The position numbers and the translations under genes were made by a program. A stretch of DNA of 64,000 bases, from positions 1 to 64,000 of IMG/VR virus record IMGVR_UViG_3300029911_000001; one strand, given 5' to 3'. The notes beneath the pieces were generated by a model. It saw nothing but the letters and a program-made list of their open reading frames with translations. It ran no database searches and had not been told where the DNA came from. The stretch's first letter is position 1. Every line of letters starts with the position of its first letter. This document shows positions 3,943 through 64,000 of this stretch, piece by piece.

Positions 3943-3978
3943 GGAAGCTCTCCTTACTATGGAGTTTAAAGTCCAACT

Positions 3979-13709: not shown

Positions 13710-14606
13710 CTACAAAGAGATGAGGTCAAAGGCACCATTGGTGATATAAAGCTTATAGGGGAGATTGGTTTCAATGTCAGTAAACGGCAGGTAGGGAACC
13801 CCCACTCCACTCAGCACTGGGATAAACTCCAATGCACCACTCGTGACTTGAAGCTGGTACAAGCTGCTCGTAACCGAGTCAATCAGTATCACCTCACTCA
13901 CGCCTGCTGCCACTACAACAGGGATGACAGTCACTGCTCCATCTGCAACTACAACGTTATAGGCACCCTCTGTAACGGTATCCACAAATGTGAATACAAG
14001 CACCGTAACTTGAGCCGTTGTAGTAAGTGCGAGGTGCCCCACCACGTCATAGGCGTCCAACGTAAAGAGAGTTGTTGTAGACACTCCTTCTGGAAAGAAC
14101 ACACTCCCAACGCCCCCTGTATCGATGAGCCCAGAGTCATACCCCGTCGCCGTTATTCTAATTTGAACAATACCCGTGGTCTCCCAGATAAGGGTGAGGG
14201 GGACGTAAAGGGCTGTGACCGAGTTAGGGATAGCTCTAAGGATTGCAGTTGGGGTGGGGTTTGTTCCTACGTCTCCTGCGCTACTGTACCCTGCTATCAA
14301 AGCGAAGCTGGGTAACCCCCTCACCCCTGAGTCTATAAAGAAGGGTCTGGGCATGTGGTGTATGGCTTGAATCACTCCCTGTAGGTTGATTGAAGTGTCC
14401 ATATAGAGCAGGTACCTATTATTTTCGACATCGAACGCGAATGTACGTACCGGGGTGAGGTACCCATCCACATACACTTCAAGGTCGCGGCGAGGGTCGA
14501 ACTCCCCTAGAGGTCCTTCCTGCACAAATGGACCGAGGTAGTCATTCAGAATCCACTGGATGCGGTCAGGGTAGGGGGTATTGGTTTCAAAACTAAACAT
14601 CGTCAT
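13710..14606 (-). CDS. putative virion structural protein with three C-terminal ~23-aa repeats
   Basis: Beta-rich 298 aa; three D-x-x-T-x3-Y-x-[LV]-x-[VI]-x2-G-A repeats. Confidence 0.65.
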   Translation of the reverse strand: MTMFSFETNTPYPDRIQWILNDYLGPFVQEGPLGEFDPRRDLEVYVDGYLTPVRTFAFDVENNRYLLYMDTSINLQGVIQAIHHMPRPFFIDSGVRGLPSFALIAGYSSAGDVGTNPTPTAILRAIPNSVTALYVPLTLIWETTGIVQIRITATGYDSGLIDTGGVGSVFFPEGVSTTTLFTLDAYDVVGHLALTTTAQVTVLVFTFVDTVTEGAYNVVVADGAVTVIPVVVAAGVSEVILIDSVTSSLYQLQVTSGALEFIPVLSGVGVPYLPFTDIETNLPYKLYITNGAFDLISL

Positions 14607-17064
14607 CCCCCACCAACATAGACAGCAGTTTCATCTCTAGTGAAGTCTGCTTGCGTTTCTTCATCTTCTGTTCAACCTGTTCTTTGGTTTTACGCATGGT
14701 GCTCAACAGGTCGTCGTCCGTTGGAACGTTGTGTCCATGCTCTGCCTTCTCAGCCTCAGTCTCATAGGGGAGCCCCTTATGCAAGTGGGGTTCCTTCTTT
14801 ATCTTGTCGTGCTCCTGTTGCTCAAGCTTATGTTCTTCGTTCTCCACCATAGCGTTGAGGTCGTCTTCCCCCTCCGGCTCTTCCTTGGACACATCCTCAG
14901 TCTTCGGCGTGTCCACAACCAAGGGTTCTGTCGCGTTCTCATTACGTTCGACAACACCGGGGACTTCTTCCTCTTCGGGAGCCTTCTTACCTTCTTCCTG
15001 TTCACGCAGGGCATCGATGAGCTTTTGTTGGATGCTCTTGTTTTTCTTCTCGCGGAGCTTCTTTATCTCCTGACGCTTCTTCATCGCGTCCTGTTCCTTC
15101 TTCAGTTTCTCCGACTTCTCCGTGGGCTGTTGTTTGTCCTTGTTCCGTTTAACCGTATTCTCACGGATAATGTTCTGAATGTTGTGCTGCACAGAGGGTA
15201 GGATACGTTCCAGCACAGCCTTTTCGTGCTTGCAATTGTGTACGACCACACCATTAGCTATAAATGATTCATCTTCATCCACGGTCAAATCGTGAAAATA
15301 TTCCGGGGCATCAACATCATTCGCTGAGTGAAGCACTCTAGTAAACCCATCTTGCCATACATCGGTTTCTTGGTTAGGAAGACCTGTATTCAACTGGTCG
15401 ATAACATGAGTACGCAACCTACCCCTCATCAAATCAAGAAGCTGGGGGTACTGTTTGTAATTCCAGTAAAGGCGGAAATACCTGTTTTTCTTTCTAACCC
15501 CCTCCTTTTTACCCCGCCAATCTTGGTGGAGACGCCCATGCCAAATACCCATGCTATACAGCATGGTAGATATTTGGGATACAACATGAGGAGAGATTGA
15601 ATACACATATTGTTGCCCCGAAGCATCAAAATGCCCATCCCCCAAAGCGTAAGATGACACAAGGGCTTGAATGGCCTCTGTGTTCCACTTAAACACATCA
15701 GGAGCGAGGCGCTTCGTAAGGGAGCCGCACCCCGCCAATTGAATCATCTTAGCCGCAAACTTACCGTCATTGACAATGACATTGAGCCACTTTTTCCCCC
15801 CATAGTTGCGAAACTTAATTTGAATATCAGCTTCAGCCCCGAGAACCCCAAACAATTTGGACTGGATATCCTGCCCAAGAGTTTCGGCCTCGTCCTGATT
15901 AATCGTAAAGTTTACCCCCCATACACGAGAGGTTACCCCGTTTATATCGCATACCACTCCTTTTGTGGTGGGTCTGCCTGACTTGACCTTATTCGGGATT
16001 CCCTTTCTATATATTGGGCTACCTTCTGCCAAATAATACCCCAGCAAAGAAGCAAAGTTGGAATCAACTTCAGTGCCTCCATCCCATTGTATTTTTGGGA
16101 AAAACAGGTACTCGTGAAACTCCAATTTATCCGATTCAACCCACCCCAACTTGCCTTGTGAGCAGTCTTCAATTTCAGGATCGCCCACATGGGCGACCCG
16201 GTTTTGCACTCGGGATATAGTGCCCTGACTAACCCCATACCTCTCAGCCAGAGTGTACTGATTTTCTATACTTGAATGTATCTCAGCTATTGCTTCCTCA
16301 GAGAGTTTTCGAGAAGGACGATTACGGTGGTGACCCGGCAAGAACTTACGCCCCCACTTTACCCCCCTATAACCGAGGGGCAGTGAACCTTTACAGCCAC
16401 AGAAGCAGGTTTCATTTCCTCGCACAACAGCTAGTGGGTGCTCTTTAGATACAATCAGGGGTTCGGATGCCCCTTTAGCTCTAACCTCCCGAGCTATCTC
16501 TCCAACATGTGCAGGTCGTCCAGAAACATGAGTAACTTTACGAGCACGCCCTTTATGAGTGACAACCCAATCCCCCACCTGTACATTTTCAATCAGTTTT
16601 TCAGTACCATCCCCCATCAGGACGCGGGTTCCGGGGGCTACGCATAAAACAAAATTCTTACGTAGGTCAAGCCGCTTCGTAGGAGCAGTAAGTTCCGGGC
16701 GTGGCTCACCCAGCAGGGCATCTCGCTGGTGAAGGTTCCACTGAGCCCCCCAGTAGAGATGGGCAGGGCAGCTACAATTAAGCTTCACATCAAGGTCGTT
16801 GGCGTTCTGAGTATCCTCCACCTTGTCCACGTCAAACTTCACCGTCACGTCGTGACCGGCAGGGTCTGAGTAGGACTCACGGCACTTAACGTTGTAGCGA
16901 AGAAACAACTGCTTCGGGTTCGAGTCGAGCAGGGAGGGAGTACAGCCGGGACGACGCTTGATACTAAAAGAATTCGTCTGGCTCACAAGTTCGGGTACGC
17001 TAATCGCCACTTTAGTTTGCGGGTAGCTGATGTTGCCGAGTGAGATGGTGATAAAGGAAGCCAT
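14593..17064 (-). CDS. SWIM zinc-finger protein interrupted by an intein (353 aa extein)
   Basis: CSC...CKH SWIM motif is restored after removing a 470 aa insertion; charged C-terminal tail. Confidence 0.8.
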   Translation of the reverse strand: MASFITISLGNISYPQTKVAISVPELVSQTNSFSIKRRPGCTPSLLDSNPKQLFLRYNVKCRESYSDPAGHDVTVKFDVDKVEDTQNANDLDVKLNCSCPAHLYWGAQWNLHQRDALLGEPRPELTAPTKRLDLRKNFVLCVAPGTRVLMGDGTEKLIENVQVGDWVVTHKGRARKVTHVSGRPAHVGEIAREVRAKGASEPLIVSKEHPLAVVRGNETCFCGCKGSLPLGYRGVKWGRKFLPGHHRNRPSRKLSEEAIAEIHSSIENQYTLAERYGVSQGTISRVQNRVAHVGDPEIEDCSQGKLGWVESDKLEFHEYLFFPKIQWDGGTEVDSNFASLLGYYLAEGSPIYRKGIPNKVKSGRPTTKGVVCDINGVTSRVWGVNFTINQDEAETLGQDIQSKLFGVLGAEADIQIKFRNYGGKKWLNVIVNDGKFAAKMIQLAGCGSLTKRLAPDVFKWNTEAIQALVSSYALGDGHFDASGQQYVYSISPHVVSQISTMLYSMGIWHGRLHQDWRGKKEGVRKKNRYFRLYWNYKQYPQLLDLMRGRLRTHVIDQLNTGLPNQETDVWQDGFTRVLHSANDVDAPEYFHDLTVDEDESFIANGVVVHNCKHEKAVLERILPSVQHNIQNIIRENTVKRNKDKQQPTEKSEKLKKEQDAMKKRQEIKKLREKKNKSIQQKLIDALREQEEGKKAPEEEEVPGVVERNENATEPLVVDTPKTEDVSKEEPEGEDDLNAMVENEEHKLEQQEHDKIKKEPHLHKGLPYETEAEKAEHGHNVPTDDDLLSTMRKTKEQVEQKMKKRKQTSLEMKLLSMLVGDDDV
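15235..16644 (-). mobile_element. intein with LAGLIDADG-type endonuclease and extra HTH/Cys module
   Basis: Starts CVAPGTRVLMGDG and ends HDLTVDEDESFIANGVVVHN followed by +1 Cys; LLGYYLAEG and YALGDG motifs. Confidence 0.9.
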
Positions 17065-19315: not shown

Positions 19316-20749
19316 CTAATTAATATTCAGTGAGAAGCGTTTCTTCCCGCTATCCCAAATACGATACCATCCCTTGGCTTCCGCTTCGGATTTCTCATCC
19401 ATGCCTGCCTTGACCCTTAGAGCGTACTTGCTTTTACGAACTGAACCGTTGGTGTACGAGTAATCCGGCTTTAACTCCTCTTCGAATGTGAACCCCAGCT
19501 TTCCATAGAGCCCACCCGTGTGAAACCGATTATCACTAAAGGTGACCATTCGCTTGAATCCCATAGAGCGTAGCTCAGGAAGAGCTAGATGAAGAGCCTT
19601 TTCATGAGGATTCCATGCTTTATATTCATGATTCCAACTAGCCCGATGCCACAGGATGACACCCTCTTCACGTTTCATAAAAACCCATACACCCACAAGT
19701 TGGGTACCATGGTGGGCAGTCACCGTCAGGCCACCGGATGCGGCTCCGAGGTAATGGTACGCATCTAGAAAGGTTCGAGCTTCAAATGGAGTTTCATGAT
19801 GGATAGCAAAAACCGGCTTGATGCGCTTCCCACTCCGGGGTTGAATCATCGAACGTACGAGTGCCTTAACTACATCAGGTTTCTCATTCCACTCATCCTG
19901 ATAAATCTGGAGAAGGCGGGTTGCGCCCTGTTGTAACCACTGAAACTTATCGGCGTCTTTAGACCCTTGAAGGTATCTCTCCGAGTGCCATATCAGTCCA
20001 TGGTACTCAATAGCTAACGAGGCCGAAGGAACGTAGATATCCACTGTATGTCGTCTGGAAAACTGGGGAACCAAAGAGGACAAAGGGACTTCCATCTCTA
20101 CCGGAACGTGGTATTCGTTACGAATGAAATCGGCAATATGGGTGGCTGGAGAGTTCGCCATCATACCCATTCGGTGACATCCACAGGACTTAATCAGTCC
20201 TTGTACGAGGGAGTCGCCGTAAACCACTGACGTGTTCCCGCAATCACAAGTCACATTCCACTGGTACTTCCCCCCCTGACCCACTCCATGTACAGTCGTT
20301 GTCGTAAGAGCGCCGAACCGCTGCCCTTCTATGTCCTTGAAGTTAGCGAGTGTGGCTTGTTCTCTCATGTAACAACCACATGAAGACGTGTGTCCACTAT
20401 TCAAGTGAGCAGTGGATACCAGTGCCATGCCCCCACATTCACAAGAGCACTGCCAGAATGACTGACCGTTATACGACCCCTCGTTACGTTGGTGGTCTAA
20501 TGTTATAACTAGAAGCCGTCCGAATTTCCTGCCCACCATACTGGGGATACGATTCTGGCGACTCTCTTTTACCAGACAACCACATGACTTGGATAACCCT
20601 CGCAGCACAGAAGCCCACGATATTTCTTTTGTTCCACCGCAGGAGCACACGAACCGATACTTCGTATGAGACACCCTAAGATTAAGAGGTAGGTTCTCCT
20701 GCTGAGGGTCAAGACGAAGTCGGTTCCACTGCATACCCAGCATATCCAT
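19316..20749 (-). CDS. putative homing endonuclease (Zn-ribbon repeats, PD-(D/E)XK-like nuclease, GNAT-like C-terminus)
   Basis: Three G.RFG.L.V/CxCG/SCGC repeats; VDIYVP..LAIEYHGLIWH; C-terminal FLDAYHYLG...TFSDNRF..G.LY..LGF. Confidence 0.75.
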   Translation of the reverse strand: MDMLGMQWNRLRLDPQQENLPLNLRVSHTKYRFVCSCGGTKEISWASVLRGLSKSCGCLVKESRQNRIPSMVGRKFGRLLVITLDHQRNEGSYNGQSFWQCSCECGGMALVSTAHLNSGHTSSCGCYMREQATLANFKDIEGQRFGALTTTTVHGVGQGGKYQWNVTCDCGNTSVVYGDSLVQGLIKSCGCHRMGMMANSPATHIADFIRNEYHVPVEMEVPLSSLVPQFSRRHTVDIYVPSASLAIEYHGLIWHSERYLQGSKDADKFQWLQQGATRLLQIYQDEWNEKPDVVKALVRSMIQPRSGKRIKPVFAIHHETPFEARTFLDAYHYLGAASGGLTVTAHHGTQLVGVWVFMKREEGVILWHRASWNHEYKAWNPHEKALHLALPELRSMGFKRMVTFSDNRFHTGGLYGKLGFTFEEELKPDYSYTNGSVRKSKYALRVKAGMDEKSEAEAKGWYRIWDSGKKRFSLNIN

Positions 20750-20759
20750 ACTAATACCC

Positions 20760-20795
20760 AAAAAGCGAAGGGACTGAGATTTCTCTCAGTCCCTT
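20760..20795 (-). terminator. intrinsic terminator after the major capsid gene
   Basis: 12-bp stem aagggactgaga/tctcagtccctt followed by a T-run on the minus strand. Confidence 0.75.
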
Positions 20796-33393: not shown

Positions 33394-36300
33394 TTAGTTA
33401 GACGACGTTGCTGAAGTCGTCGTAACCGTGAAGGTGACGCTGATGTAGAGCAACGAGAACACCGGCTGGATGGTCATGGTGATGTTCACCGTGGTCGGAT
33501 CAGACGGGTCAGGTATGACACTCAGGTTCTGGTAGCTTGCGAGAATCTCGTTCGCAACCAAGGAGCGGAGACGTGCGTTGCAGACCGCCGTGATGTCATT
33601 CACAAGACTGGTAACCAGCTTGCGACCAATGAACTGCTGAAGGTCAGAACGGAACAACTGACGGGTGTAGTCCACGATGGTAGTGCATGTCGGCTCCGAG
33701 TAGATGGGGTTCGACGGGTCGGTGGACTTGTAGTGGCGAATCTGGAGAGCCCCGCTCTGGTTGGTGAGAACCACGAGACCCTGTGACGCCATGTTGTTGA
33801 GCGTTGCATCGTCGTAGGTAACGAGGAGGCGAGTGAACCCAACCAAGTCCTGCAAGGTCAGAGTCGTCGCAACGTCGTTCGCCGGGTTGACTTCAAGACC
33901 AGCCATAGCAGCCGCCATGAATTCGCCGGAGATGGCGTACTCAAGAGCAACACCGGTCAAACCGTTGGTCACCTGAATACCAGCAACCGGCATACCGACG
34001 GCAATCATACGGGAGTTCTTCAAACCGGTCGCGTTCGCAATAGCCTGATAGGGCGAGGTGAACTGCGAGTAGCCGACGAAGCCGAGTGCCTCACCCTTGT
34101 AACGGGCAGTGGCCTGAGTGGTAAGCTGACGGCTCAAGAACTGATGAACAGTCGTGCTGGTGGACAGAGGAACAATGACGTTCGCCTTGCTGGTTTGACC
34201 CGGCAGGTTAGCAGTCAATGTACCAATGGCCGATATGAAGGAAGCGTCCGAAGCCACGGCGAGACCGGTCTGCTTAGGCACCTGAATAGCACCGAAGACC
34301 TGAGCACCGTTCTGGTTCAGAAGCGAGATACCCAGCGACAGACGGTTGGTGACATTTGGCTGACCATACTGGGTGTAAGCGTCGGCCACATTAGTGAAGA
34401 GTTTGATTGCCATATCTGTCACAGTCTTGTTGACCGTGAACGAAACATAGTAGAACTCTCCCACCGCAGGTTCATTACCCGAAGCATGATTGGTTGTGAT
34501 GATAGCCGTGTCGCCAGTGTTCGCACCAAAGGTTGTGACAACCTCAGTCTGAAGCCCAGAGACGGCAATCAGGCTGTTAGGCTGTGCAGTACCAAACGGT
34601 ACATAAGTGGAACCTGTATAGCGGACAGCAGCCTTGCTCACAACGTAGGTGAGAGTGTCGCCGGGGGCGAAGCTGTACTGAGGAGAAGGCAGCGACGTGT
34701 AACCATAGCCGAGAGCATCAGCCGGGTTCACAACGGTGACCTTGAAACCAGTGGCGGCATCAATGTAGGTCTGGTCGAGGTAGCCAACGCCAGCAGAGCC
34801 AGCACTCGCCGAGGAAGTCACGGTGTAACTGTGAGTGTAAGGTTGAGTGATTGCGTTGGCACCGTGGGCGAGATTGGCAGCAGCCGAAGAAGTTCCGATG
34901 GCATCGGAACCCGTACCAGCGGTCAAAGTTGCGGTGATGACACCAACAGTGACGGTGAGCGGGAACATCGCGACAAGCGAGTTCACATTACCTGTGCTGT
35001 GCAGGGTAATCGCGTTGCCAGAGATAGTCGGAGCAGCGTTGGTCGTGTTGTCGATGGCAATGGTAACCGCATTGCCAACCGACCCCGGAGTCGAAGCCAA
35101 GAAGTGAACGGTCGAAGCCGAGAACGTTTTGTCCAAGTAAGCCTGAATGGCCGGGGTGATAACCGTAGAGCCATCGTTGTTGAAGGTCAAGGTAACCGTC
35201 TCGTCAACCGCGTTTGGTTCGTCCCATGCATCTGAGAAAGAGTGCGGATAGACAATGCCCGTGGTTGCGAAAGCACCCGCAGCAACCGTGTTGGTTCCGT
35301 TGGAAACAACTGGTAGAACCTGACCGAGTTCGTTCTTCAAGGTGTAGGTGCCCTGCCCTGACTGAGCCGGGTTGACAACTGTCACCGTGTAGACGTGGTC
35401 GTTGATGGTGTTGCGGTAGTAGCTGGCATACACCTTCTGACCGGATGCTGGCGGATTGTACAAGGTGATAGTCGCCGAGTCGCCGGAGAGACGGGAAACT
35501 TGAACTGCGCCAGCCTGATAGGCGGTGAAGGGGTCAACCCCGACATACACGGTAACCTTTGTAGGGTCATCAGTAGGACGAGCCAAACCACTTCCGTCCG
35601 TGGGTACATCCGGGAGGGTGAAGGTGGCAGTGTTACCGTTGCCGTGGCCGGCGAACTGGAGGTACACATGCTCGTCAACCAGCGTGGTGGTAATCTGGGT
35701 CGGGCCGAACGGGGTGTAACCCGTGGTCGAAGTTCCAACCGCAGTCGATGCTGCGGCACCCCATTGGATGACAGGGTTGCCAGCGGCATCCGTGCTAAGC
35801 ACGTAGTCCACGTCTTCGATGAAGTCTGCACGGTTAGGACCGAACCCAACCTGAGTGATGGTGGATACAGTGGTGGCCGGAAGCAGGTCGTAGGTGTTCT
35901 GGTAGTTGTTGGTGTAGTAGGTCGCAGTCAGAGTCGAGCCAAACACAACGGGGTTGGCCAGAGTGATGAGGCTATTAGCACCATCAACCGCTGTCACCGT
36001 GGCAGCGGAACCGTTCACGAGGACAGTGACATTGGCCGGATTTGTGGTGACCACTCCGCCGTTGGTACCGTCAACGATGGGGTTGTTCTTTACCTTGAAG
36101 ATGGTGTTAGTGTTCGGACCTTCCCCACCAGATAAAGAGGCAGCACCTGTGACCGATAGAGCACCGGTACCGACCGGAGTCGCACCCACCAAGTAACCCG
36201 CCGAGAGGGTGAGAATACCAGCCTCGATGAGATTGTGAAGGTCAACCACCGTACGGATGGTGTTGTCGGACTTGCGGATGTTGATGACAATTGCGTTGGT

Positions 36301-36936
36301 GCCGTAGCCAGAGACCGCCAGAGCATCCACCACGCCCGGAGTCGGGGGCGACAGCAAGGTTGAATCGATAAGCTGGATGCTCACTTCGTTACCAACCGCA
36401 CCCGGAAGGGTTGTGGTAACAACCTCGTGAGCCCCCCCGGCACCGGCAACAGTCAGAGAAGCGAAGGCTGGAATTTGAGCCGACAGATTCTCGTTAGAAA
36501 TGAGGGTGTCCATGCGCTTGAAGTAGTAACTGACGTCAAAATTGGTTCCCGGAAGCACAATATCCTGAGTCTGGAAAGCACCAGTGGAGCCAACCAGCGA
36601 AACAACAGTGACAGGAACGCCATCAGCGGTGACCTGAATGAAGGAGGGGTCATTGGTAACCGTACCACTTCCATCACCCGTAACCACCGGGAAATAGGTG
36701 GTGTTAAAGTTGCTGGTCAAGCCAGTAACTTGGTCAGAAATGTTCTCATCCACAACTTGGTCATCGGCGACGGCTGAAGAGCCGCGATGAATCTCTTGGT
36801 TGTTCTGTGTGAAGTATTCGAGACCTTCACCAATGATTACCGGGATACGAGCGGAACCGAACAGCGGCTGACCACCGTTGTCTATCACCACACTTGTAAA
36901 AACGCCGGGAGCGGCGTAACTGCCAAAAAGTGCCAT
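33394..36936 (-). CDS. tail sheath protein
   Basis: N-terminal YAAPGVFT; sheath-type C-terminus (L..FIGRK...DPSDPTTVNITMTIQPVFSLLYI); 1180 aa with inserted beta domains. Confidence 0.9.
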   Translation of the reverse strand: MALFGSYAAPGVFTSVVIDNGGQPLFGSARIPVIIGEGLEYFTQNNQEIHRGSSAVADDQVVDENISDQVTGLTSNFNTTYFPVVTGDGSGTVTNDPSFIQVTADGVPVTVVSLVGSTGAFQTQDIVLPGTNFDVSYYFKRMDTLISNENLSAQIPAFASLTVAGAGGAHEVVTTTLPGAVGNEVSIQLIDSTLLSPPTPGVVDALAVSGYGTNAIVINIRKSDNTIRTVVDLHNLIEAGILTLSAGYLVGATPVGTGALSVTGAASLSGGEGPNTNTIFKVKNNPIVDGTNGGVVTTNPANVTVLVNGSAATVTAVDGANSLITLANPVVFGSTLTATYYTNNYQNTYDLLPATTVSTITQVGFGPNRADFIEDVDYVLSTDAAGNPVIQWGAAASTAVGTSTTGYTPFGPTQITTTLVDEHVYLQFAGHGNGNTATFTLPDVPTDGSGLARPTDDPTKVTVYVGVDPFTAYQAGAVQVSRLSGDSATITLYNPPASGQKVYASYYRNTINDHVYTVTVVNPAQSGQGTYTLKNELGQVLPVVSNGTNTVAAGAFATTGIVYPHSFSDAWDEPNAVDETVTLTFNNDGSTVITPAIQAYLDKTFSASTVHFLASTPGSVGNAVTIAIDNTTNAAPTISGNAITLHSTGNVNSLVAMFPLTVTVGVITATLTAGTGSDAIGTSSAAANLAHGANAITQPYTHSYTVTSSASAGSAGVGYLDQTYIDAATGFKVTVVNPADALGYGYTSLPSPQYSFAPGDTLTYVVSKAAVRYTGSTYVPFGTAQPNSLIAVSGLQTEVVTTFGANTGDTAIITTNHASGNEPAVGEFYYVSFTVNKTVTDMAIKLFTNVADAYTQYGQPNVTNRLSLGISLLNQNGAQVFGAIQVPKQTGLAVASDASFISAIGTLTANLPGQTSKANVIVPLSTSTTVHQFLSRQLTTQATARYKGEALGFVGYSQFTSPYQAIANATGLKNSRMIAVGMPVAGIQVTNGLTGVALEYAISGEFMAAAMAGLEVNPANDVATTLTLQDLVGFTRLLVTYDDATLNNMASQGLVVLTNQSGALQIRHYKSTDPSNPIYSEPTCTTIVDYTRQLFRSDLQQFIGRKLVTSLVNDITAVCNARLRSLVANEILASYQNLSVIPDPSDPTTVNITMTIQPVFSLLYISVTFTVTTTSATSSN

Positions 36937-47171: not shown

Positions 47172-48587
47172 TTACTCCGCGTCCTGAAAGTAGTCGAAGC
47201 TGGCTGCGGTACTGCGAACCTCATCCAGCGTGAAATCCTTCTTCAGTTCGCCGTTGAGGAACACGGTCTTGAGGTAGTTGCCGTAGCTGTCCTCTTCCGT
47301 GGTGTCGATAGTACGCCAGCCGCCGTCGCTGTTGAACAGGTTGAAGCGGCCACCGATGGATGCCTTCGAAGAATCCGTCTTCGGGTTCTTGAAGACCGGA
47401 CTCCACTGCCCTGCCCGGTTGATGGCCGAGCACTTGATAGCAAAGCGCATCGTGTCGCGGTTCTGCTGCTGCAACAGGGCACCGCCCATGCCGTAGCCCC
47501 AGTTGTCCATCGACCAACCCGACCGGGTGAGGGAGGAGTTGATGCGAAGGATGTTCTGATAGTTCACGCCGTCGCCCTGAATCGCACGAATCTGTGCCGG
47601 GAGAACCTTGTAGCCCTTGGCGTTGGTCTCGAAGCCGAACTTCTCCGCAACTGCGTTGAAGATGTCTTCGAGGACAACCACAGGGTCACCTGAGTCCGGG
47701 CGAAGCACGACAGTACCGTCCCGACGCAGAACCTTCTCACGAAGCTGGTTGCCGAAGATTTCAGCGACCGCGTTGTGCGTGTCGTAGCTGTCAACCACGC
47801 ACGCGAGAAGCGCAGTGGGCGACTTGTCGAGCATGTTCTCGTAGGCATCACGCTCGTTAGCCTGACCCCATGACGTGACCGTGCTGTGTTCCATAGCAGG
47901 GATAGAGAACCCCGGCATATCCTTGGCTCCGTAATAGTCACGTAGCAGTATGGCCGCTTCCATCGTGTCTGAGCCCATGAAGTTGACCAGATGTGCTGCT
48001 CCGCCGATAGCCGCCGATTCTTGCGAGGAGACGCCACGGGCTCCAAAGTCATGCAGCTTGAACGGCAAGCCAGCAGGAGTTCCGGTGCGAACCAAGTCCT
48101 TGCCAATTTCCTGCTTGATGTGCCATGACAGGGTGCCGACCGTGATGGGGTACCATGTTCCTCGGAGGATGATGGTCTCCGCCCAGTTTGTCAGCCAAGG
48201 AAACTCATCATCCGTGTTCTCAATGGTCAGCAGGGCGTTCTTCACAGAAACAACTGTACCCTCCGGCACCGCACGAATCTTGAGGGGAAGGCGACCGTCG
48301 TGCTTCTCCAGCAACCTGAGCCAACCCGTCGTATTGAATACCTTATCGGAGCCAAAGTGAGCCGCCGCAAATGCTTGAGCCTCGTCTACGTCTTCCTTAG
48401 TGAAGACCTTACCGACCAAGTAGGTCTTGAGGGTGTACTGAAGACCGAAGAACATCGTGTCCTTCCAAAAACCTCCGCGAGACATAAGGTGGGAGTAAAT
48501 AGTTCGAGTATCTGGGGGGTACTGAAAATGGTGGGAAAGCTTGTAACTGTCCGTTGTCAGTAGGGGGTTAACTCTCAGTTTTTGCAC
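47172..48587 (-). CDS. nadV: nicotinamide phosphoribosyltransferase (Nampt)
   Basis: TDSYKLSH..QYP, LHDFGARG, IPAMEHS, RPDSGDP, IQGDG and FAIKCS motifs. Confidence 0.95.
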   Translation of the reverse strand: MQKLRVNPLLTTDSYKLSHHFQYPPDTRTIYSHLMSRGGFWKDTMFFGLQYTLKTYLVGKVFTKEDVDEAQAFAAAHFGSDKVFNTTGWLRLLEKHDGRLPLKIRAVPEGTVVSVKNALLTIENTDDEFPWLTNWAETIILRGTWYPITVGTLSWHIKQEIGKDLVRTGTPAGLPFKLHDFGARGVSSQESAAIGGAAHLVNFMGSDTMEAAILLRDYYGAKDMPGFSIPAMEHSTVTSWGQANERDAYENMLDKSPTALLACVVDSYDTHNAVAEIFGNQLREKVLRRDGTVVLRPDSGDPVVVLEDIFNAVAEKFGFETNAKGYKVLPAQIRAIQGDGVNYQNILRINSSLTRSGWSMDNWGYGMGGALLQQQNRDTMRFAIKCSAINRAGQWSPVFKNPKTDSSKASIGGRFNLFNSDGGWRTIDTTEEDSYGNYLKTVFLNGELKKDFTLDEVRSTAASFDYFQDAE

Positions 48588-49497
48588 TTGTTTTCTCCTT
48601 CAAAAAAGCCTTTACATCATTTATGAAGAACGGGATTCTCACCATTTGGTATCCGTTATCTTCCGCCCACTGGTCTTTCAACTTGTCCAAACTTCGTATG
48701 CGTTCCAAGTCCTCGGGCTTCTTCCCTGTCAATACCTTGTAATGCTGTGCTCCATCAAATTCAATGAGTAGCTTCATCCCCTCAACACAGAAGTCATACC
48801 GTAGATGGCGACCTGACTTTGGGTTTATGAGTCCGGGGAAACACTTCTGTGGTTTGTACTTCCAACTCCACGCTTCCAAACACTTTCTAACTTCCTCCTC
48901 GCCCCACGAATAGTACCGTGAAAAGCATTTTGGACAACCTGCACCCCGAAGATGATTACTCGCCAGTTGTTTAAAGTCCCCATGCACCTTACATGTAATG
49001 GTAACCGATTTCAAAGAGTAGGTGTAACCTAGTCGGTCATAACCATAGCGGTCACCGTGGAGCCTTCGAGCTTCGATGATGAAATCTTCGGGGGACTTAC
49101 GCTTTTTATCGCTCCTCTGTACTATCCCACATTTTGGACAGCCACACCCATTCAAATGGTTATTCGGGGTCATCTCAAACCCCCCGTGAACCGGACAAAG
49201 AATTGTTACTTTGTCCAAAGTTGTGGTTCGGTATACAACGTTGGAATAGTCGTATAGATCACCATGCTTCTTCCTTGCTTTCTCGATGAACTTCTCAGTC
49301 GTTGATGTTGCTTCCTTCCGAGCACATTTAGGACAGTTCTGGCCCACTCTGTGACATGAGGGGAGTTGCCAAAACACACCATGTTCTCGACACACAATTT
49401 CTACCTTGCTACGTTTGTTTTTGTACACCAACCGGGAGTAATCATACCGCTCTCCGTGTACCTGTTGCACTGCTACCAAATACTCCTGTGTCGTCAT
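48568..49497 (-). CDS. homing endonuclease-like protein (DUF723-type Zn repeats plus Vsr/PD-(D/E)XK-like nuclease)
   Basis: Three HG.RYDYS/C..HG.F/CPKC repeats; LRYDF...LIEFDGAQHY..D..K. Confidence 0.85.
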   Translation of the reverse strand: MTTQEYLVAVQQVHGERYDYSRLVYKNKRSKVEIVCREHGVFWQLPSCHRVGQNCPKCARKEATSTTEKFIEKARKKHGDLYDYSNVVYRTTTLDKVTILCPVHGGFEMTPNNHLNGCGCPKCGIVQRSDKKRKSPEDFIIEARRLHGDRYGYDRLGYTYSLKSVTITCKVHGDFKQLASNHLRGAGCPKCFSRYYSWGEEEVRKCLEAWSWKYKPQKCFPGLINPKSGRHLRYDFCVEGMKLLIEFDGAQHYKVLTGKKPEDLERIRSLDKLKDQWAEDNGYQMVRIPFFINDVKAFLKEKTSAKTES

Positions 49498-49537
49498 ACC
49501 CACCTCTAACTAAGGGGTGGGTATTGCAAACAGTAAC

Positions 49538-50115
49538 TTAGTTTATTCTCAAATACCTATTCCTTGACACGTAACCCAGCCCTAGCAGCCCTGTGCCCAG
49601 CAGCAGCAAGGAGGAAGGCTCAGGAGTCGGGGCTGGGATGGGGACAGCGAAGGTGTCCAGTGGCGTGACTGACAGGCTTACGATCCCCCCTTCGGGTGTG
49701 TCCCCACTCATGAATGAAATCCAGTCCAGCCCGTCCGCCTCAAAGCCCTCCGAAGTGCGTGTAAGTCCAGCGTATAGGGAATACTCCAGACCGCGTTGTA
49801 GCCCGTAAATGCAACCCCCGTCGCCGCCTCAAACCACGGGCTGGAAGCAGTCAACACGTTGTTGTTGAATGTCGTACCGGGGGCTGACAACACCATGGAG
49901 GCAGTATGCTGGGCATCCGATATCACACCCGTGAGTCCTGTGATAATTCCGGCTGAATTGGTTGTGAAGGTTCCGCGTCCTGCGAGGGGTAGATAGGGGA
50001 TACCGTCAGGCGTGTCGGCTGAATTGAAGAAAAAAGAATACTGACTGGCAGAGGCTGCTGGAGTTCCTAGTACAACCATCAAGGTCAAGGCAAAAGAAAG
50101 TAGGGCGGTTTTCAT
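49538..50115 (-). pseudogene. PEP-CTERM surface protein, frameshifted by one base near 49790
   Basis: Signal peptide in one frame; TPEPSSLLLLGTGLLGLGYVSRNRYLRIN* in the adjacent frame; span 578 nt = 3n-1. Confidence 0.8.
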
Positions 50116-50162: not shown

Positions 50163-51164
50163 TTATTTCAATCCTTCCGCTGCGAGTTCCTTGGGCGTCA
50201 TGTGCGTGTAGGTGACGTTCATCCGGCCAACCTCGATGGTGTCCCACACGTACAGGCCGAAGTGCTTGTACACGACGGGGAAGACACTCTCCCGGTGCGT
50301 GTCGATGAGCAGTTCTGCCTTCATCTGGTCGATGGGAAACCACTTAACCTCTTCAATGTCATCGCCAGCAATCGCATTGAGCGAGGGTGACTCCGCCGCG
50401 AAGACGAGCGACTTGATTTGGTCGGGCTCCCCTTTCCACCGCCAGTCAGGGATGAGAGCAGAGCCGATGAACTGAGGTTCATTCACCACGAGGCTGGTCT
50501 CCTCCATGGCTTCACGGGCAGCGTCGTACTCGTAGCTGGGGGTGTAGGGCTCAGAGAAGCCACCGATGAACCGCCACTGCGTCTCACCCGGCTTGCGACC
50601 GAGCAGGAACAGCGTTTTGGTGTCGTCGTTCTCCGGCTTGTGGTAAATCACCACGTCCACCGTCGCCTTCACAGCAGGACGGATGTTGGTCATGGCGTAG
50701 ATGACGCCAGCACGGAACTCCGGGGACTCCATGACCGTGTTGGTAATTTTCGCACGGATGGTGGTGCCGCTGATGCCGTCGAGCGTGTTGGGGAGAGTCA
50801 GTTCAATCGGCTTGTACGCCCCATGGTAGTGCGGTACGAAAGAATCGCGAGAGCCGTACAGCGTCACGTCGCCGTAGTCCACTACGTCACGAATAGCCCT
50901 GTCCAAGTTCCGCGACCACGTTGCATCTTCCTTGGTGTCGGTGAGGGGGAAAATCATGAAGTCGGGATACGCAGCCTGAACCATCGCCTTGCGAGTCTCG
51001 AAGTCGAGGGGGTTGTTGTAGGTCGAGCCAATGGACTTCTGACCGAGGAACAGAATGACCTTGCTGTGCCGTGCCCTTACTTCATCGAACAGGGCTCTGT
51101 GTCCAGCGTGAAGAGCATCGACTTGGCAGCGTGCGACAAGAACGCCGTAGTTAGGCTTTTGCAT
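50163..51164 (-). CDS. nadM: bifunctional NMN adenylyltransferase / Nudix hydrolase
   Basis: ARCQ..LHAGH, NPL, ISGTTIR; Nudix box GGF...AAREAMEET; AGDD. Confidence 0.92.
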   Translation of the reverse strand: MQKPNYGVLVARCQVDALHAGHRALFDEVRARHSKVILFLGQKSIGSTYNNPLDFETRKAMVQAAYPDFMIFPLTDTKEDATWSRNLDRAIRDVVDYGDVTLYGSRDSFVPHYHGAYKPIELTLPNTLDGISGTTIRAKITNTVMESPEFRAGVIYAMTNIRPAVKATVDVVIYHKPENDDTKTLFLLGRKPGETQWRFIGGFSEPYTPSYEYDAAREAMEETSLVVNEPQFIGSALIPDWRWKGEPDQIKSLVFAAESPSLNAIAGDDIEEVKWFPIDQMKAELLIDTHRESVFPVVYKHFGLYVWDTIEVGRMNVTYTHMTPKELAAEGLK

Positions 51165-61512: not shown

Positions 61513-61577
61513 GAACCTATCAACCTCTCAGATGCTGAGGAGCTAACCTCTACTAAAGAGGTTGATAGTCACGAAAG

Positions 61578-61658
61578 AGCTACGAGAGGGATTCGAACCC
61601 CCGGTGTTTGTATGCCGCATTACAAGTGCGGTGCATTCGACCACTCAGCCATCGTAGC
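61578..61658 (-). tRNA. tRNA-Thr(UGU) with a 12-nt variable region
   Basis: GCTACGA/TCGTAGC acceptor; CCGCA-CTTGTAA-TGCGG; GGGGG-TTCGAAT-CCCTC; no encoded CCA. Confidence 0.85.
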
Positions 61659-61664
61659 ATACCT

Positions 61665-61934
61665 TTACATTTTTACAAAAGAGAGTACCGGTACATCTGG
61701 GTAGCTCTCCCTGACTTCTTTATTCCAAACCTCGTGCCTTGCATGACATTCTGAACAGTAGAACGCTCCCGCATCGAAGGAGTGGTCTTGATAATCACTC
61801 GACCAACCCCCTGTGCCGGGAGGGCACCAGAACTCAGCCGAGTTTTCACATCTCCCCTTGTAGTTCTCAATGTCCGTGGATACAAACCCCACAGACTCCG
61901 GTACGCCCATGCATTGAATCTTCAAATCGGTCAT
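61665..61934 (-). CDS. hypothetical protein
   Basis: GAGGA RBS; Cys motifs. Confidence 0.6.
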   Translation of the reverse strand: MTDLKIQCMGVPESVGFVSTDIENYKGRCENSAEFWCPPGTGGWSSDYQDHSFDAGAFYCSECHARHEVWNKEVRESYPDVPVLSFVKM

Positions 61935-61942
61935 GTATCCTC

Positions 61943-62251
61943 TTACTTATACTTCGGGAAGAATCCAAAGTTCTTGGGGTACTCTTCTCTCGGTATGAAA
62001 ACGATTGCAACTTCTTGTCCGTTCAACGTGGACTCGGTGATGACTTGATGCTTCGGCACTTCCTTCGCCTTCTCGAACTCCTCGTCGGTTACCTTGCACA
62101 CAACCTTGGCGAAGGACGTTTGCAGCCACTTGACCATATCCGGGTCGGTGGGGAAGTTCAGGTAGAGCGACAGAGGCCCGTGTGCTGCGGCCACGATGGC
62201 GTTACCTACCGGGATGGAGCCCTTCACCAAAACGTACATCTTCAATTTCAT
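61943..62251 (-). CDS. peptidyl-tRNA hydrolase, PTH2-like
   Basis: KMYVLV...G....AAH....W.....KVVCKV; true start at 62251 (the longer ORF overlaps tRNAs). Confidence 0.7.
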   Translation of the reverse strand: MKLKMYVLVKGSIPVGNAIVAAAHGPLSLYLNFPTDPDMVKWLQTSFAKVVCKVTDEEFEKAKEVPKHQVITESTLNGQEVAIVFIPREEYPKNFGFFPKYK

Positions 62252-62340
62252 GCTGGCCTCGTGTATGAGTCCGATAGGGCTCATTGGACTCATATATGAA
62301 GCACTAAAGCCGTTAGTGCTCCATATATGGGACTTTATCT

Positions 62341-62413
62341 TGGTGGGCACTTCGGGAGTTGAACCCGAATCACCGTTTCCCTTGGCAGGGTGCCACGGTG
62401 AACCAATGTGCCC
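62341..62413 (-). ncRNA. tRNA-like RNA without a D arm
   Basis: GGGCAC/GTGCCC-ACCA end; TTCGGG-TTCAACT-CCCGAA T arm; single long arm TCACCGT/ACGGTGA. Confidence 0.65.
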
Positions 62414-62419
62414 GAATCT

Positions 62420-62506
62420 TGGTTGGGGAGGCAGGATTCGAACCTGCAATGAGCTTACGCTCGGGGGCTTCAAAGGCCCTTGACCTACCATTGGTACGAC
62501 TCCCCA
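62420..62506 (-). tRNA. tRNA-Gln(UUG) with a long variable arm
   Basis: TGGGGAG/CTCCCCA-ACCA; GGGC-CTTTGAA-GCCC; variable hairpin GAGC-GTAA-GCTC. Confidence 0.8.
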
Positions 62507-62511
62507 ATAAC

Positions 62512-62745
62512 TTATGCTGTGACCAAATCCTTCGGAGGCCACTCAAACTTCCAGTTGCTCCGCTCACGAATCTTGTTATCGCGAATGTTGTAGAACCCGG
62601 CGTACGCTGCACACGTGATAGAGCAGAACACAGGATGACTCAGGTCGTCCGGCATCTCAACCATCTGAGGCCCACGTGGGGTGTCAGGGTCTTCGTGATG
62701 ACGCCGATAATCTGCACAACCGGGTGCTGGACACGCAATCAACAT
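62512..62745 (-). CDS. small Cys-rich protein
   Basis: CP..GC and FCSITC motifs. Confidence 0.55.
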   Translation of the reverse strand: MLIACPAPGCADYRRHHEDPDTPRGPQMVEMPDDLSHPVFCSITCAAYAGFYNIRDNKIRERSNWKFEWPPKDLVTA

Positions 62746-62748
62746 AGC

Positions 62749-63348
62749 TCACTCCCAGTACAGCCTATAGTTCGTTCCGTATACTTCGTTCAACTTCTTG
62801 AAGAAGGCATCGGTCTTTATCTTGACCATGAAATCGTCACCCTTGGCGACGACGCCTTCCCACACTGGATACTTTCCGCTGCGGACATCATCAACGAACT
62901 GCTTGTTGAGGTTGCCCTCGTAAACCACTTCAGCCGCGTATGGCAGGTCTCCGTACTGCTTGAGAAACTGCCGGGGCGACATCATCCCCTTCTTGAACAG
63001 GTACACATCGAACAAGCGAAGCTGCTTAGGCTCCCCCGGCGTATGCACACCCGCGAAACTTGAGTCCCCGAAGAACTCTGTGAAGACCGTGGTCCTCTGG
63101 CAGTTCCGGTCGTAGTCCTTCACCCGGCGAGTCAACTCATCTGCCATGGTATCCATGAAGACCGGAATCGCTTCACCGAAGACCGGGTTGCTCTTGTCGA
63201 ACAACTCATGTCGGGTACCAAACTTGAACCAACCCTTCTTGGGGTTCCACTCCCAACGAAGGTTCGAGCCATCGTACTTGTAGAAAGCGATGCACTGCTT
63301 ACCTAGAGGGGCTTTGGAACTTCCTTCGATACTTGGGTACTGCTCCAT
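62749..63348 (-). CDS. ATP-dependent RNA ligase family protein
   Basis: Nucleotidyltransferase motifs KYDGSN, EFFG, LFDV, EGVVAK and KIK. Confidence 0.8.
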   Translation of the reverse strand: MEQYPSIEGSSKAPLGKQCIAFYKYDGSNLRWEWNPKKGWFKFGTRHELFDKSNPVFGEAIPVFMDTMADELTRRVKDYDRNCQRTTVFTEFFGDSSFAGVHTPGEPKQLRLFDVYLFKKGMMSPRQFLKQYGDLPYAAEVVYEGNLNKQFVDDVRSGKYPVWEGVVAKGDDFMVKIKTDAFFKKLNEVYGTNYRLYWE

Positions 63349-63456
63349 ACATCCCTTTCAATTTCTCCAATACCACTTCCATAATCAGGGAGTGGTTTAT
63401 GAAATGCCTTCAATGTGATACCGACACGAGTAATCCAAAGTTCTGCTCCAACAAGT

Positions 63457-63613
63457 GACCATATTGATGGAAATTACATGAACAACCATCGTAATAACTT
63501 GCGGTGCAACTGCCCAAACTGCGATATACAACTACCTACGTCAAAAGGGGAAGAACCGAGGCAACGGTAGGCATTGGCGTCGAGTTCGTTATGCGGAGGG
63601 TAAGTCCCGCTAA
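63457..63613 (+). pseudogene. HNH endonuclease remnant
   Basis: DHIDGNYMNNHRNNLRCNCPNC..LPT then a frameshift into KNRGNGRHWRR.RY.EGKS*. Confidence 0.7.
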
Positions 63614-63616
63614 AAA

Positions 63617-63692
63617 TGGAGCCGGTTGAGGGACTCGAACCCTCTGCCTTTTGCTTACCAAGCAAATACACATCCATATATGCTTAACCGGC
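63617..63692 (-). tRNA. tRNA-Thr(GGU)
   Basis: GCCGGTT/AACCGGC-TCCA; TTTGC-TTGGTAA-GCAAA; canonical T arm; atypical D arm. Confidence 0.85.
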
Positions 63693-63698
63693 CTTTCT

Positions 63699-63902
63699 TT
63701 ACTTACAACAGCGACTAATCTGCTTATCAAGTTCCTGTGCAGTCTCGTGCGCTTTTTCAAAAAACTCATCAACATCTTCGGAGTAGGTGACTCCGTGAAG
63801 CAGAGCACGTCGCCGCTTGTCCTCTGCTACGTTGTGGCGAAGGTTCTCCAGCATCTGCTGAGCGATTGCTGCTGCGGCCTCATCCAAGTTTTCCATACTC
63901 AC
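63699..63902 (-). CDS. small hypothetical protein
   Basis: 67 aa ORF between tRNA genes. Confidence 0.5.
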   Translation of the reverse strand: MSMENLDEAAAAIAQQMLENLRHNVAEDKRRRALLHGVTYSEDVDEFFEKAHETAQELDKQISRCCK

Positions 63903-63917
63903 CTAATACTGCGAAAC

Positions 63918-64000
63918 TGGAGCTAGGTGAGGGACTCGAACCCTCGGTGTTTGTATACCGCTTTACGAAAGCGGTGCCGTCGCCACTGAGCCAACCTAGC
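63918..64000 (-). tRNA. tRNA-Thr(CGU) with a 12-nt variable region
   Basis: GCTAGGT/ACCTAGC-TCCA; CCGCT-TTCGTAA-AGCGG; 5' end coincides with the window edge. Confidence 0.85.

What the first reader, a model, noticed from the sequence alone, without database searches (positions are those of the whole stretch)
49538..50115. Phage-encoded PEP-CTERM protein, frameshifted, between the two NAD-salvage genes
Seen: signal peptide, ~150 aa beta domain, and a textbook TPEPSSLLLLGTGLLGLG + basic tail reachable only by a one-base frame change near 49790. Established: PEP-CTERM proteins are exosortase substrates of EPS-producing diderms. Inference: the phage uses or jams the host exosortase pathway, e.g. 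for receptor masking, and this motif style points to an Acidobacteria-like host. The unshifted frame would yield a secreted, unanchored form.
Basis: partly seen in the sequence, partly recalled or inferred. Interest (0 to 1): 0.6.

Follow-up and report, generated by a model that had tools for sequence, protein, structure and literature searches.

The report
Broken PEP-CTERM gene in peat phage
A giant phage from peat carries a gene for a surface protein copied from Acidobacteria-type hosts, complete with the PEP-CTERM sorting tail, but one missing base splits it in every known copy, so it is most likely a recently dead passenger gene and mainly useful as a clue to the phage's host.

Summary
On the minus strand, a 135-aa ORF with a signal peptide (49708-50115) is followed in the -1 frame by a 96-codon open stretch (49541-49828). 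That stretch ends in a PEP-CTERM domain scoring above both curated cut-offs (TIGR02595 23.7 bits against 16; PF07589 29.7 against 20.7). Joined with an X at the break, the two pieces make a 192-aa protein. It aligns collinearly (88 bits) with a family of 170-210-aa PEP-CTERM proteins. Every named full-length member of that family is from Acidobacteriaceae or Terriglobia. The break lies at 49792-49806: two bases stand where a codon is expected.

The break is not an assembly error. The 578 bases are identical in 10 independent assemblies, contigs of four further runs show no indel, and a gap-tolerant scan found only the shifted allele. All copies are clonal, however. There is no slippery heptamer and no stable RNA structure, so programmed frameshifting is unsupported.

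The gene and a homing-endonuclease-like ORF form a 1.6-kb insertion between NAD-salvage genes that adjoin in 10 of 11 related viral loci. The most likely reading is a recently inactivated host-derived passenger gene. Exosortase "use or jamming" is untested. The Acidobacteria-like host inference is supported.

The parts
50047..50115 (-). Start codon and Sec-type signal peptide (residues 1-23, A-S-A before the predicted cut) of the PEP-CTERM gene
   Evidence: Read directly from the translation. It aligns to the signal peptide of the family profile.
49795..50046 (-). In-frame part of the cargo domain, corresponding to strands 1-6 of the predicted small beta-barrel. It carries the family motifs FSF-like, GxGTF, ITGLTG and PW...GxxF.
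   Evidence: The profile of alignment A1 matches positions 3-104 at 44.8 bits. phmmer against 1.8e9 proteins gives E = 3.5e-5 to P0003. BLASTP gives 36% identity, E = 2e-12.
49792..49806 (-). Break window: a -1 frame change, equivalent to one base missing. Two bases (49793-49794) lie between the last in-frame codon and the first homologous -1 codon.
   Evidence: The same spacing is seen in all copies. There is no slippery heptamer, and no homopolymer run of 4 or more bases, inside the break window; the only such run in the overlap, GGGGG at 49819, lies upstream of it.
49628..49792 (-). Rest of the cargo domain and the linker, readable only in the -1 frame. It contains the (D/E)Y-x-(I/L)Y strand motif.
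   Evidence: The hybrid aligns collinearly to the profile up to position 174 at 88.1 bits. The frame is open over 49541-49828.
49556..49627 (-). PEP-CTERM sorting domain: PEP motif, hydrophobic helix, basic tail. The stop codon is at 49538-49540.
   Evidence: TIGR02595 23.7 bits against 16; PF07589 29.7 bits against 20.7. Coordinates come from the six-frame search.
49708..49794 (-). Out-of-frame, Arg-rich tail and TGA stop of the 135-aa ORF as it stands. The stop overlaps the ATG (49709-49711) of the 57-aa ORF that some gene callers predict (ATGA overlap).
   Evidence: Translations. The profile alignment of frame 0 ends before this stretch. The 57-aa gene was called in L006 and L009. There is no Shine-Dalgarno sequence before the ATG.
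48568..49503 (-). Homing-endonuclease-like ORF (311 aa) with treble-clef zinc-finger repeats and a DUF559/Vsr-like end. It has low GC (0.46) and is the second half of the insertion.
   Evidence: Weak Pfam hits to DUF4379, DUF723 and DUF559. PF05265 is on record for the same gene. GC. It is absent between the NAD genes of relatives.
50163..51164 (-). NMN adenylyltransferase / Nudix fusion (NadM-Nudix type), the upstream flank
   Evidence: NF003786 E = 5.7e-12; PF00293 46 bits.
47172..48587 (-). Nicotinamide phosphoribosyltransferase (NAMPT), the downstream flank
   Evidence: NF006629 574.8 bits; PF18127 and PF04095. Phage NAMPT genes are the only DNA-level matches.

Best explanation
This is a host-derived passenger gene ('moron') of a jumbo, contractile-tailed peat phage. 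It is a divergent member of a family of small secreted proteins from Acidobacteriaceae. Family members have a signal peptide, a cargo domain of about 130 aa predicted as an eight- or nine-stranded beta-barrel, a linker and a PEP-CTERM exosortase sorting tail.

The gene arrived, together with a homing-endonuclease-like ORF, as a 1.6-kb insertion between the phage's adjacent NAD-salvage genes. It has since lost one base in the loop between barrel strands 6 and 7 (49792-49806). As the DNA stands, the signal peptide and the sorting tail are on different reading frames. Ordinary translation gives a 135-aa truncated, probably unfoldable secreted fragment, and no exosortase substrate.

The downstream frame is still fully open, and its PEP-CTERM tail still scores above threshold. 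The lesion is therefore recent, and it is fixed in the one clonal population that has been sampled.

Shown: the domain call, the family membership of both halves, the position and reality of the break, the insertion, and the lack of recoding signals. Inferred: that the intact ancestor was sorted by a host exosortase, that the host is an Acidobacteriaceae-type bacterium, and that the present gene is non-functional.
For: - PEP-CTERM scores above the curated cut-offs.
- The only real hit of ORF-N among 1.8e9 representatives is P0003, an intact 187-aa PEP-CTERM protein.
- P0003 seeds a family of 116 hits, mostly 170-210 aa with PF07589 (alignment A1).
- The profile matches frame 0 and then the -1 frame collinearly. 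The hybrid scores 88 bits, against 45 and 38 bits for the pieces.
- The 578 bases are identical in 10 independent assemblies from JGI, ENA and Logan.
- Contigs of four other runs show no indel.
- A gap-tolerant pattern found only the 8-nt spacing, in 4 further contigs.
- No longer variant was found in the 5.8e9-cluster word search within 74-236 aa.
- There is no X_XXY_YYZ heptamer in the overlap, and the RNA fold z-score is +0.92.
- In 10 of 11 related viral loci, NadM-Nudix is followed directly by NAMPT, with no endonuclease or PEP homologue between them.
- GC3 of the locus is 0.56, against 0.71-0.75 in the flanking genes.
- In the AF2 model of P0003 (pLDDT 75.6), the break falls between strands 98-104 and 107-115, so three strands of a closed barrel are lost.
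- Full-length matches in species genomes are all Acidobacteriaceae or Terriglobia, and four such genomes have exosortase at 254-264 bits. The phage has none.
Against: - All known copies are at least 99.9% identical over 6 kb. Fixation says nothing about selection, and no diverged phage copy exists to show an intact ancestor directly.
- Only contigs, not raw reads, could be laid, so a minority intact allele is not excluded.
- The -1 frame being open for 96 codons, the stop/start ATGA overlap, and a second borderline PEP-CTERM ORF elsewhere in the genome leave room for a functional reading.
- The phage copy is only 36-40% identical to any cellular member and sits on a long, unplaced branch. It may therefore have evolved for a long time inside phages, which suggests past function.
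Confidence: 0.66

Rival explanations
1. The split is functional as two products. One is the 135-aa secreted fragment. The other is a 57-aa peptide (49541-49711) made by termination-reinitiation at the ATGA overlap. The peptide has an acidic N-tail (4 acidic, 0 basic residues), one hydrophobic helix and a basic C-tail. It could insert without a signal peptide, present a PEP motif to the host exosortase, and act as a decoy or inhibitor ('jamming').
For: - The stop and start codons overlap as ATGA.
- Gene callers predict the 57-aa ORF with a weak PF07589 hit.
- The charge distribution of the peptide fits an N-out/C-in topology.
- The PEP-CTERM tail is intact.
- A second PEP-CTERM-like ORF in the same genome suggests the phage has some use for the motif.
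Against: - There is no Shine-Dalgarno sequence before the ATG, whereas roughly half the phage's genes show a GGAG-type site.
- The ATG lies inside sequence homologous to the cargo domain of intact family members, so it is an ordinary internal Met codon of the ancestral frame.
- Haft et al. 2006 (PMC1569441) report that about 97% of PEP-CTERM proteins carry a signal peptide.
- No independent lineage shows such a split.
Confidence: 0.1
2. Programmed -1 ribosomal frameshifting or another recoding event makes both a truncated secreted form and a full-length PEP-CTERM-anchored form from one mRNA.
For: - The required shift is -1, the commonest programmed direction.
- Both frames overlap by 40 codons (49711-49828).
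- The lesion is present in every copy.
Against: - There is no X_XXY_YYZ heptamer anywhere in the overlap. The only one in the gene, at 50035, is upstream of a -1-frame stop.
- The break window has no run longer than GGG.
- The 121 nt around and after it fold no better than shuffles: z = +0.92, with 161 of 200 shuffles at least as stable.
- Homology shows that frame 0 is correct through ...AFT, which excludes the GGGGG run at 49819 as the shift site.
Confidence: 0.05
3. The frameshift is a sequencing or assembly artefact and the real gene is intact.
For: The source is a metagenome assembly, and only contigs rather than raw reads could be inspected.
Against: - The sequence is identical in 10 assemblies from three pipelines and many samples.
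- Contigs of four further runs show no indel.
- Four more contigs were found by a spacing-tolerant pattern, all with the same spacing.
- The site has no long homopolymer.
Confidence: 0.03

Closest known systems
PEP-CTERM / exosortase (EpsH, XrtA) protein-sorting system (Haft et al. 2006, PMC1569441; TIGR02595, PF07589)
   Same: The C-terminal tripartite signal is all present at the extreme C-terminus and scores above both curated cut-offs: a PEP motif, a hydrophobic helix of about 17 residues and a basic cluster. A Sec signal peptide is present at the gene's start. The cargo is rich in Thr, Ser and Asn and has no Pfam family, as is typical of PEP-CTERM proteins.
   Different: The gene is encoded by a phage that has no exosortase. 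The signal peptide and the sorting tail are in different frames, so no single ordinary translation product has both. No paper in the searched library describes PEP-CTERM cargo genes in tailed phages.
Uncharacterised family of small beta-barrel PEP-CTERM proteins in Acidobacteriaceae (alignment A1; e.g. P0003, P0006, and P0090 'PEP-CTERM sorting domain-containing protein [Terracidiphilus sp.]')
   Same: The length (192 aa when joined), the order of motifs and the PEP-CTERM tail match. The tail's 18 residues TPEPSSLLLLGTGLLGLG differ from the family consensus at a single position, and the profile match is collinear at 88 bits. The family is multi-copy in Terriglobus-, Granulicella- and Edaphobacter-type genomes that carry exosortases.
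   Different: Identity is only 36-40%, and the phage copy sits on a long unplaced branch. It is frameshifted. It is the only family member found in 2.9 million IMG/VR contigs. The cargo fold has only generic eight-stranded barrel look-alikes, with Z up to 8.9 and no Foldseek hit, so its function is unknown.
Phage 'morons' and homing-endonuclease-associated insertions between conserved phage genes
   Same: A 1.6-kb block with different base composition lies between two genes that abut in relatives. One half of it is an endonuclease-like ORF.
   Different: Mobility of the endonuclease-like ORF was not tested. Nothing shows that the PEP-CTERM gene travelled with it.
Programmed -1 frameshifts of tailed phages (e.g. 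the tail assembly chaperone gpG/gpGT type)
   Same: Two overlapping frames are joined by a -1 shift.
   Different: There is no slippery heptamer, no stimulatory structure and no conservation across diverged genomes. The context is also not that of a tail chaperone.

Membership tests
PEP-CTERM sorting domain (TIGR02595 / PF07589) | HMM score above the curated cut-off | tested here: met
   TIGR02595 23.7 bits against 16; PF07589 29.7 bits against 20.7. The six-frame scan gives 25.7 bits.
PEP-CTERM sorting domain (TIGR02595 / PF07589) | PEP tripeptide, then a hydrophobic helix, then a basic cluster, at the extreme C-terminus (Haft 2006) | tested here: met
   The translation of 49541-49627 shows PEP, then 17 hydrophobic or small residues, then a tail with three Arg, ending 5 residues after the last Arg. 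The definition is from PMC1569441.
PEP-CTERM sorting domain (TIGR02595 / PF07589) | N-terminal signal peptide on the same polypeptide | tested here: not met
   The signal peptide is in frame 0 and the tail is in the -1 frame. ORF-N stops at 49708, and the 57-aa ORF has no signal peptide.
PEP-CTERM sorting domain (TIGR02595 / PF07589) | Co-occurrence with an exosortase (EpsH/Xrt) in the genome that expresses it | tested here: inconclusive
   There is no PF09721 match in the 231-kb phage record, which is 74% complete. Four Acidobacteriaceae genomes carrying the cargo family have exosortases at 254-264 bits. The actual host is not known.
PEP-CTERM sorting domain (TIGR02595 / PF07589) | Cleavage or sorting by the exosortase and export to the cell surface or EPS | not testable with these tools
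   This needs expression in an exosortase-bearing host.
Acidobacteriaceae small beta-barrel PEP-CTERM family (alignment A1) | Collinear match of the whole protein to the family profile | tested here: met
   This is met only across the frame change. The X-joined hybrid scores 88.1 bits over profile positions 3-174 of 184.
Acidobacteriaceae small beta-barrel PEP-CTERM family (alignment A1) | Single intact ORF of about 170-210 aa | tested here: not met
   The gene is split into 135 aa plus a 96-codon open frame. No intact allele was found in any collection scanned.
Programmed -1 ribosomal frameshift site | Slippery heptamer X_XXY_YYZ in the zero frame within the overlap | tested here: not met
   There is none between 49708 and 49831.
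Programmed -1 ribosomal frameshift site | Stable downstream stem-loop or pseudoknot | tested here: not met
   MFE is -28.3 kcal/mol against a shuffle mean of -31.2, z = +0.92. Pseudoknots were not modelled.
Programmed -1 ribosomal frameshift site | Conservation of the two-frame arrangement in diverged relatives | not testable with these tools
   All copies are at least 99.9% identical, and relatives lack the gene.

The most novel reading that the evidence does not exclude
The phage deliberately feeds PEP-CTERM-tagged products into the exosortase pathway of its acidobacterial host. The split locus would give a signal-peptide-less 57-aa PEP-CTERM peptide that occupies or blocks the exosortase. 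The second PEP-CTERM-like ORF, at 141977-142579 of the same genome, would be sorted to the cell surface. Together they would remodel the EPS or surface layer of the infected cell, for example for superinfection exclusion or to hold cells in aggregates. This would be the first phage-encoded manipulation of exosortase sorting.
Probability: 0.07. Interest if true: 0.75.

Novelty: new member of a known kind. Interest (0 to 1): 0.38.

Why it matters
Three points make the locus useful even if the gene is dead.

1. Host clue. It gives a concrete, sequence-based host clue for a very large peat phage: an Acidobacteriaceae-type, exosortase-bearing diderm. The record is 231 kb, and the same locus sits on a 431-kb contig. 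Phages of Acidobacteria, a dominant group in peat and soil, are poorly known.

2. Capture of sorting-system cargo. It shows that cargo genes of the PEP-CTERM/exosortase system can be captured by tailed phages. The literature searches made here found no description of this. The strict PEP motif pattern matched only 49 stretches in 2.9 million viral contigs, and only this phage carries a member of this family.

3. A dated gene death. The frameshift is real, fixed and recent, with no recoding signal. It is therefore a clean example of a passenger gene decaying.

If the split were instead functional, it would open a new class of phage-host interaction at the EPS or surface-protein sorting step.

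Tried and rejected
- Assembly error: rejected. The sequence is identical in 10 assemblies, contigs of 4 runs show no indel, and 4 more contigs found by a spacing-tolerant pattern all have the shifted spacing.
- Intact orthologue in related phages: not found. The closest complete relative (332 kb; its NadM is 54% identical) and four other relatives have no TIGR02595 match. Their NAD genes abut. The family scan of IMG/VR returned only this phage, plus one unrelated motif-level hit.
- Word-index protein search with ORF-N: returned only itself.
- phmmer hits P0002 and P0004: these are repeat or low-complexity proteins matching short stretches, and were dismissed.
- The GGGGG run at 49819 as the slip site: rejected, because homology holds in frame 0 downstream of it.
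- Fold assignment of the cargo: Foldseek against PDB gave nothing at E <= 0.001. VIA-align gave only generic eight-stranded barrels, at Z values typical of unrelated matches. No function was inferred from this.
- Tree placement to name a donor genus: the phage copy sits on a 1.6-substitution branch with no supported sister, so no donor is named below family level.
- Searching the 431-kb JGI contig for further PEP-CTERM or exosortase genes: that record is not held.
- RNA evidence: no RNA run holds the stretch, so expression is untested.
- Literature: searches on PEP-CTERM with phage, exosortase with bacteriophage, and PEP-CTERM with auxiliary metabolic genes found no description of phage-borne PEP-CTERM cargo in tailed phages.

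Full report
**What is there.**
The finding lies on the minus strand. ORF-N (49708-50115, 135 aa) begins with a textbook Sec signal peptide (residues 1-23, A-S-A before the predicted cut). It continues into a Thr/Ser/Asn/Gly-rich sequence. The -1 frame is open from 49828 down to the stop at 49538-49540, a run of 96 codons. That frame ends with TPEP, a 17-residue hydrophobic stretch and a basic tail. The tail scores 23.7 bits on TIGR02595 (curated cut-off 16) and 29.7 bits on PF07589 (cut-off 20.7). In a six-frame scan of the whole record it scores 25.7 bits, E = 6.7e-6. The PEP-CTERM call stands.

**Context.**
The window is the first 64 kb of a 231,108-bp IMG/VR virus record, estimated 74% complete. 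It is a large contractile-tailed phage. It has a 1180-aa protein with a tail-sheath C-terminal domain, a tail-terminator-like protein, a UvrD-type helicase, HNH and homing endonucleases, an intein-bearing ORF and four tRNAs. The flanking genes are a NAMPT (574.8 bits to NF006629) and an NMN-adenylyltransferase/Nudix fusion. The samples are peat metagenomes.

**Both halves belong to one protein family.**
- phmmer of ORF-N against 1.8 billion representatives gave a single genuine relative, P0003. This is an intact 187-aa protein with a signal peptide and a PEP-CTERM tail (E = 3.5e-5 for the whole library; pairwise 36% identity, E = 2e-12).
- P0003 seeds a family of 116 proteins, mostly 170-210 aa and mostly carrying PF07589. 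I aligned 31 full-length members as A1.
- A profile of A1 matches window frame 0 over profile positions 3-104, and the -1 frame over positions 149-174.
- With an X at the break, the 192-aa hybrid aligns collinearly over positions 3-174 of 184 at 88.1 bits. The separate pieces score 44.8 and 37.8 bits.
- The last clearly in-frame codon ends at 49795, and the first clearly homologous -1 codon starts at 49792. Two bases therefore lie where a codon is expected. This is equivalent to one lost base or a -1 shift.
- Because this loop varies in length across the family, the lesion can be placed only within 49792-49806.

**Is the frameshift real?**
- The exact 135-aa product is on record in 37 blocks of the assembly collection.
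- Ten places from JGI, ENA and Logan assemblies were fetched, and their 578 bases are identical to the window.
- Contigs of four further runs, none flagged as a possible source, cover the site without any difference or indel.
- A pattern that tolerated 5-12 bases across the break found four more contigs in IMG/VR and JGI metagenomes. All have the 8-base spacing of the shifted allele.
- The word search found no longer variant within 74-236 aa.
- An assembly artefact is therefore very unlikely.

Two limits apply. All copies are clonal, at least 99.9% identical over 6 kb. Only contigs, not reads, were available, so a minority allele cannot be excluded.

**Is it programmed?**
The 124-nt overlap contains no X_XXY_YYZ heptamer. 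The only homopolymer of four or more bases is a GGGGG at 49819, and homology places it upstream of the frame change. The 121 nt around and after the break fold no better than shuffled sequence (z = +0.92). The ATG of the 57-aa ORF overlaps the ORF-N stop as ATGA, but has no Shine-Dalgarno sequence. It lies inside sequence homologous to the ancestral cargo domain. Recoding, and a deliberate two-gene arrangement, are therefore unsupported, though neither is excluded.

**What the truncation does.**
AlphaFold2 on P0003 with A1 (pLDDT 75.6) gives nine strands between residues 25 and 151, followed by the transmembrane helix at 158-179. Foldseek found nothing significant in the PDB. The exhaustive aligner found only generic eight-stranded up-and-down barrels: designed barrels, the OprF/OmpA N-domains and avidins. 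Their Z values, up to 8.9, are in the range common for unrelated matches. The break maps between strands 98-104 and 107-115 of P0003. The 135-aa product would therefore lack the last three strands and carry about 28 out-of-frame, Arg-rich residues. It is not a native 'secreted, unanchored form'.

**Origin.**
- In the closest complete relative (332 kb; its NadM-Nudix is 54% identical) and in nine other related viral loci, NadM-Nudix is followed directly by NAMPT.
- Five of those records, including the complete one, have no TIGR02595 match.
- The PEP-CTERM locus and the adjacent 311-aa homing-endonuclease-like ORF (48568-49503; weak DUF4379, DUF723 and DUF559 hits; GC 0.46) are therefore a 1.6-kb insertion.
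- GC3 of the PEP locus is 0.56, against 0.71-0.75 in the flanking genes.
- In 2.9 million IMG/VR contigs, only this phage carries a member of the family.

**Host.**
Full-length matches of the family in GTDB species genomes are all in Acidobacteriaceae or Terriglobia: Terriglobus, Granulicella, Edaphobacter, Terracidiphilus and bog MAGs. Matches in other phyla cover the tail only. Four such genomes carry exosortases at 254-264 bits, and the phage has none. In a sample of 201 Acidobacteriota genomes, 20 match, and about six hold strong full-length, multi-copy matches. The 18-residue TPEP... tail of the phage copy differs from the family consensus at a single position. Haft et al. note that PEP-CTERM tails are more alike within a lineage than between lineages (PMC1569441). 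The phage copy itself is divergent, 36-40% identical, and sits on a long unplaced branch. No donor genus can be named.

**Verdict.**
No evidence bears on exosortase use, jamming or receptor masking.

The best-supported account is a host-derived passenger gene that recently lost one base and is decaying (confidence about 0.66). A functional split, programmed frameshifting and an artefact are minor rivals.

A second, borderline PEP-CTERM-like ORF lies at 141977-142579 of the same record. It scores 16.0 bits against the cut-off of 16 when scored as a protein, and 20.6 bits in the six-frame scan. It is intact, has an N-terminal hydrophobic segment, and is absent from relatives. It keeps the more interesting reading alive at low probability.

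No operator restriction was triggered.

Noticed in passing
G000:C1:141977-142579 (+), outside the window; L002:985-1587: A second, intact 200-aa ORF in the same phage. It has a basic and hydrophobic N-terminus, a long Pro/Thr-rich linker, and a PEP-CTERM-like end (PEP, hydrophobic helix, KRK). TIGR02595 scores 20.6 bits in the six-frame scan but exactly 16.0 bits, which equals the cut-off, when scored as a protein. It is absent from relatives G001 and G004.
   Followed up: partly
window 48568-49503 (-): A 311-aa ORF with repeated treble-clef zinc-finger modules (DUF4379/DUF723) and a DUF559/Vsr-like C-terminus. Its GC is 0.46, against 0.56-0.58 in the neighbouring genes. It is probably a homing endonuclease inserted together with the PEP-CTERM locus, and its 3' end overlaps the NAMPT start by 20 nt.
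   Followed up: partly
L003 (JGI contig Ga0311343_10000004, 431,749 bp): The same locus lies at 159.6-166.0 kb of a 431,749-bp metagenome contig. The phage genome may therefore be much larger than the 231-kb IMG/VR record, which is estimated 74% complete. That record could not be searched.
   Followed up: no
window 14593-17064 (-): An 823-aa ORF with Hint and intein-splicing domains (PF05203, PF14890). It is an intein-containing phage protein whose host protein was not identified.
   Followed up: no
window 61577-64000 (-): A tRNA cluster: three tRNA-Thr with different anticodons (TGT, GGT, CGT) and one tRNA-Gln (TTG). The last one touches the window end.
   Followed up: no
window 33394-36936 (-) and 3979-9363 (-): An unusually long (1180-aa) protein whose C-terminus alone matches the tail-sheath C-terminal domain. 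Also a 1794-aa protein with a chitobiase/hexosaminidase C-terminal domain. A neighbouring 1259-aa ORF has a weak CBM5/12 hit. These are possibly glycan-binding tail fibres.
   Followed up: no
L071:1920-2873 and 3359-4081 (IMGVR_UViG_3300036832_001089): Another viral contig carries two unrelated PEP-CTERM ORFs (317 and 240 aa, both with signal-peptide-like starts), just upstream of what look by position and size like packaging genes. No family scan was run on those genes. This could be a prophage edge or a second case of phage-borne PEP-CTERM cargo.
   Followed up: partly
window 19316-20761 (-): A 481-aa HNH/homing endonuclease (phrog_374, phrog_559, phrog_3339). It is another mobile endonuclease gene in the structural region.
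   Followed up: no
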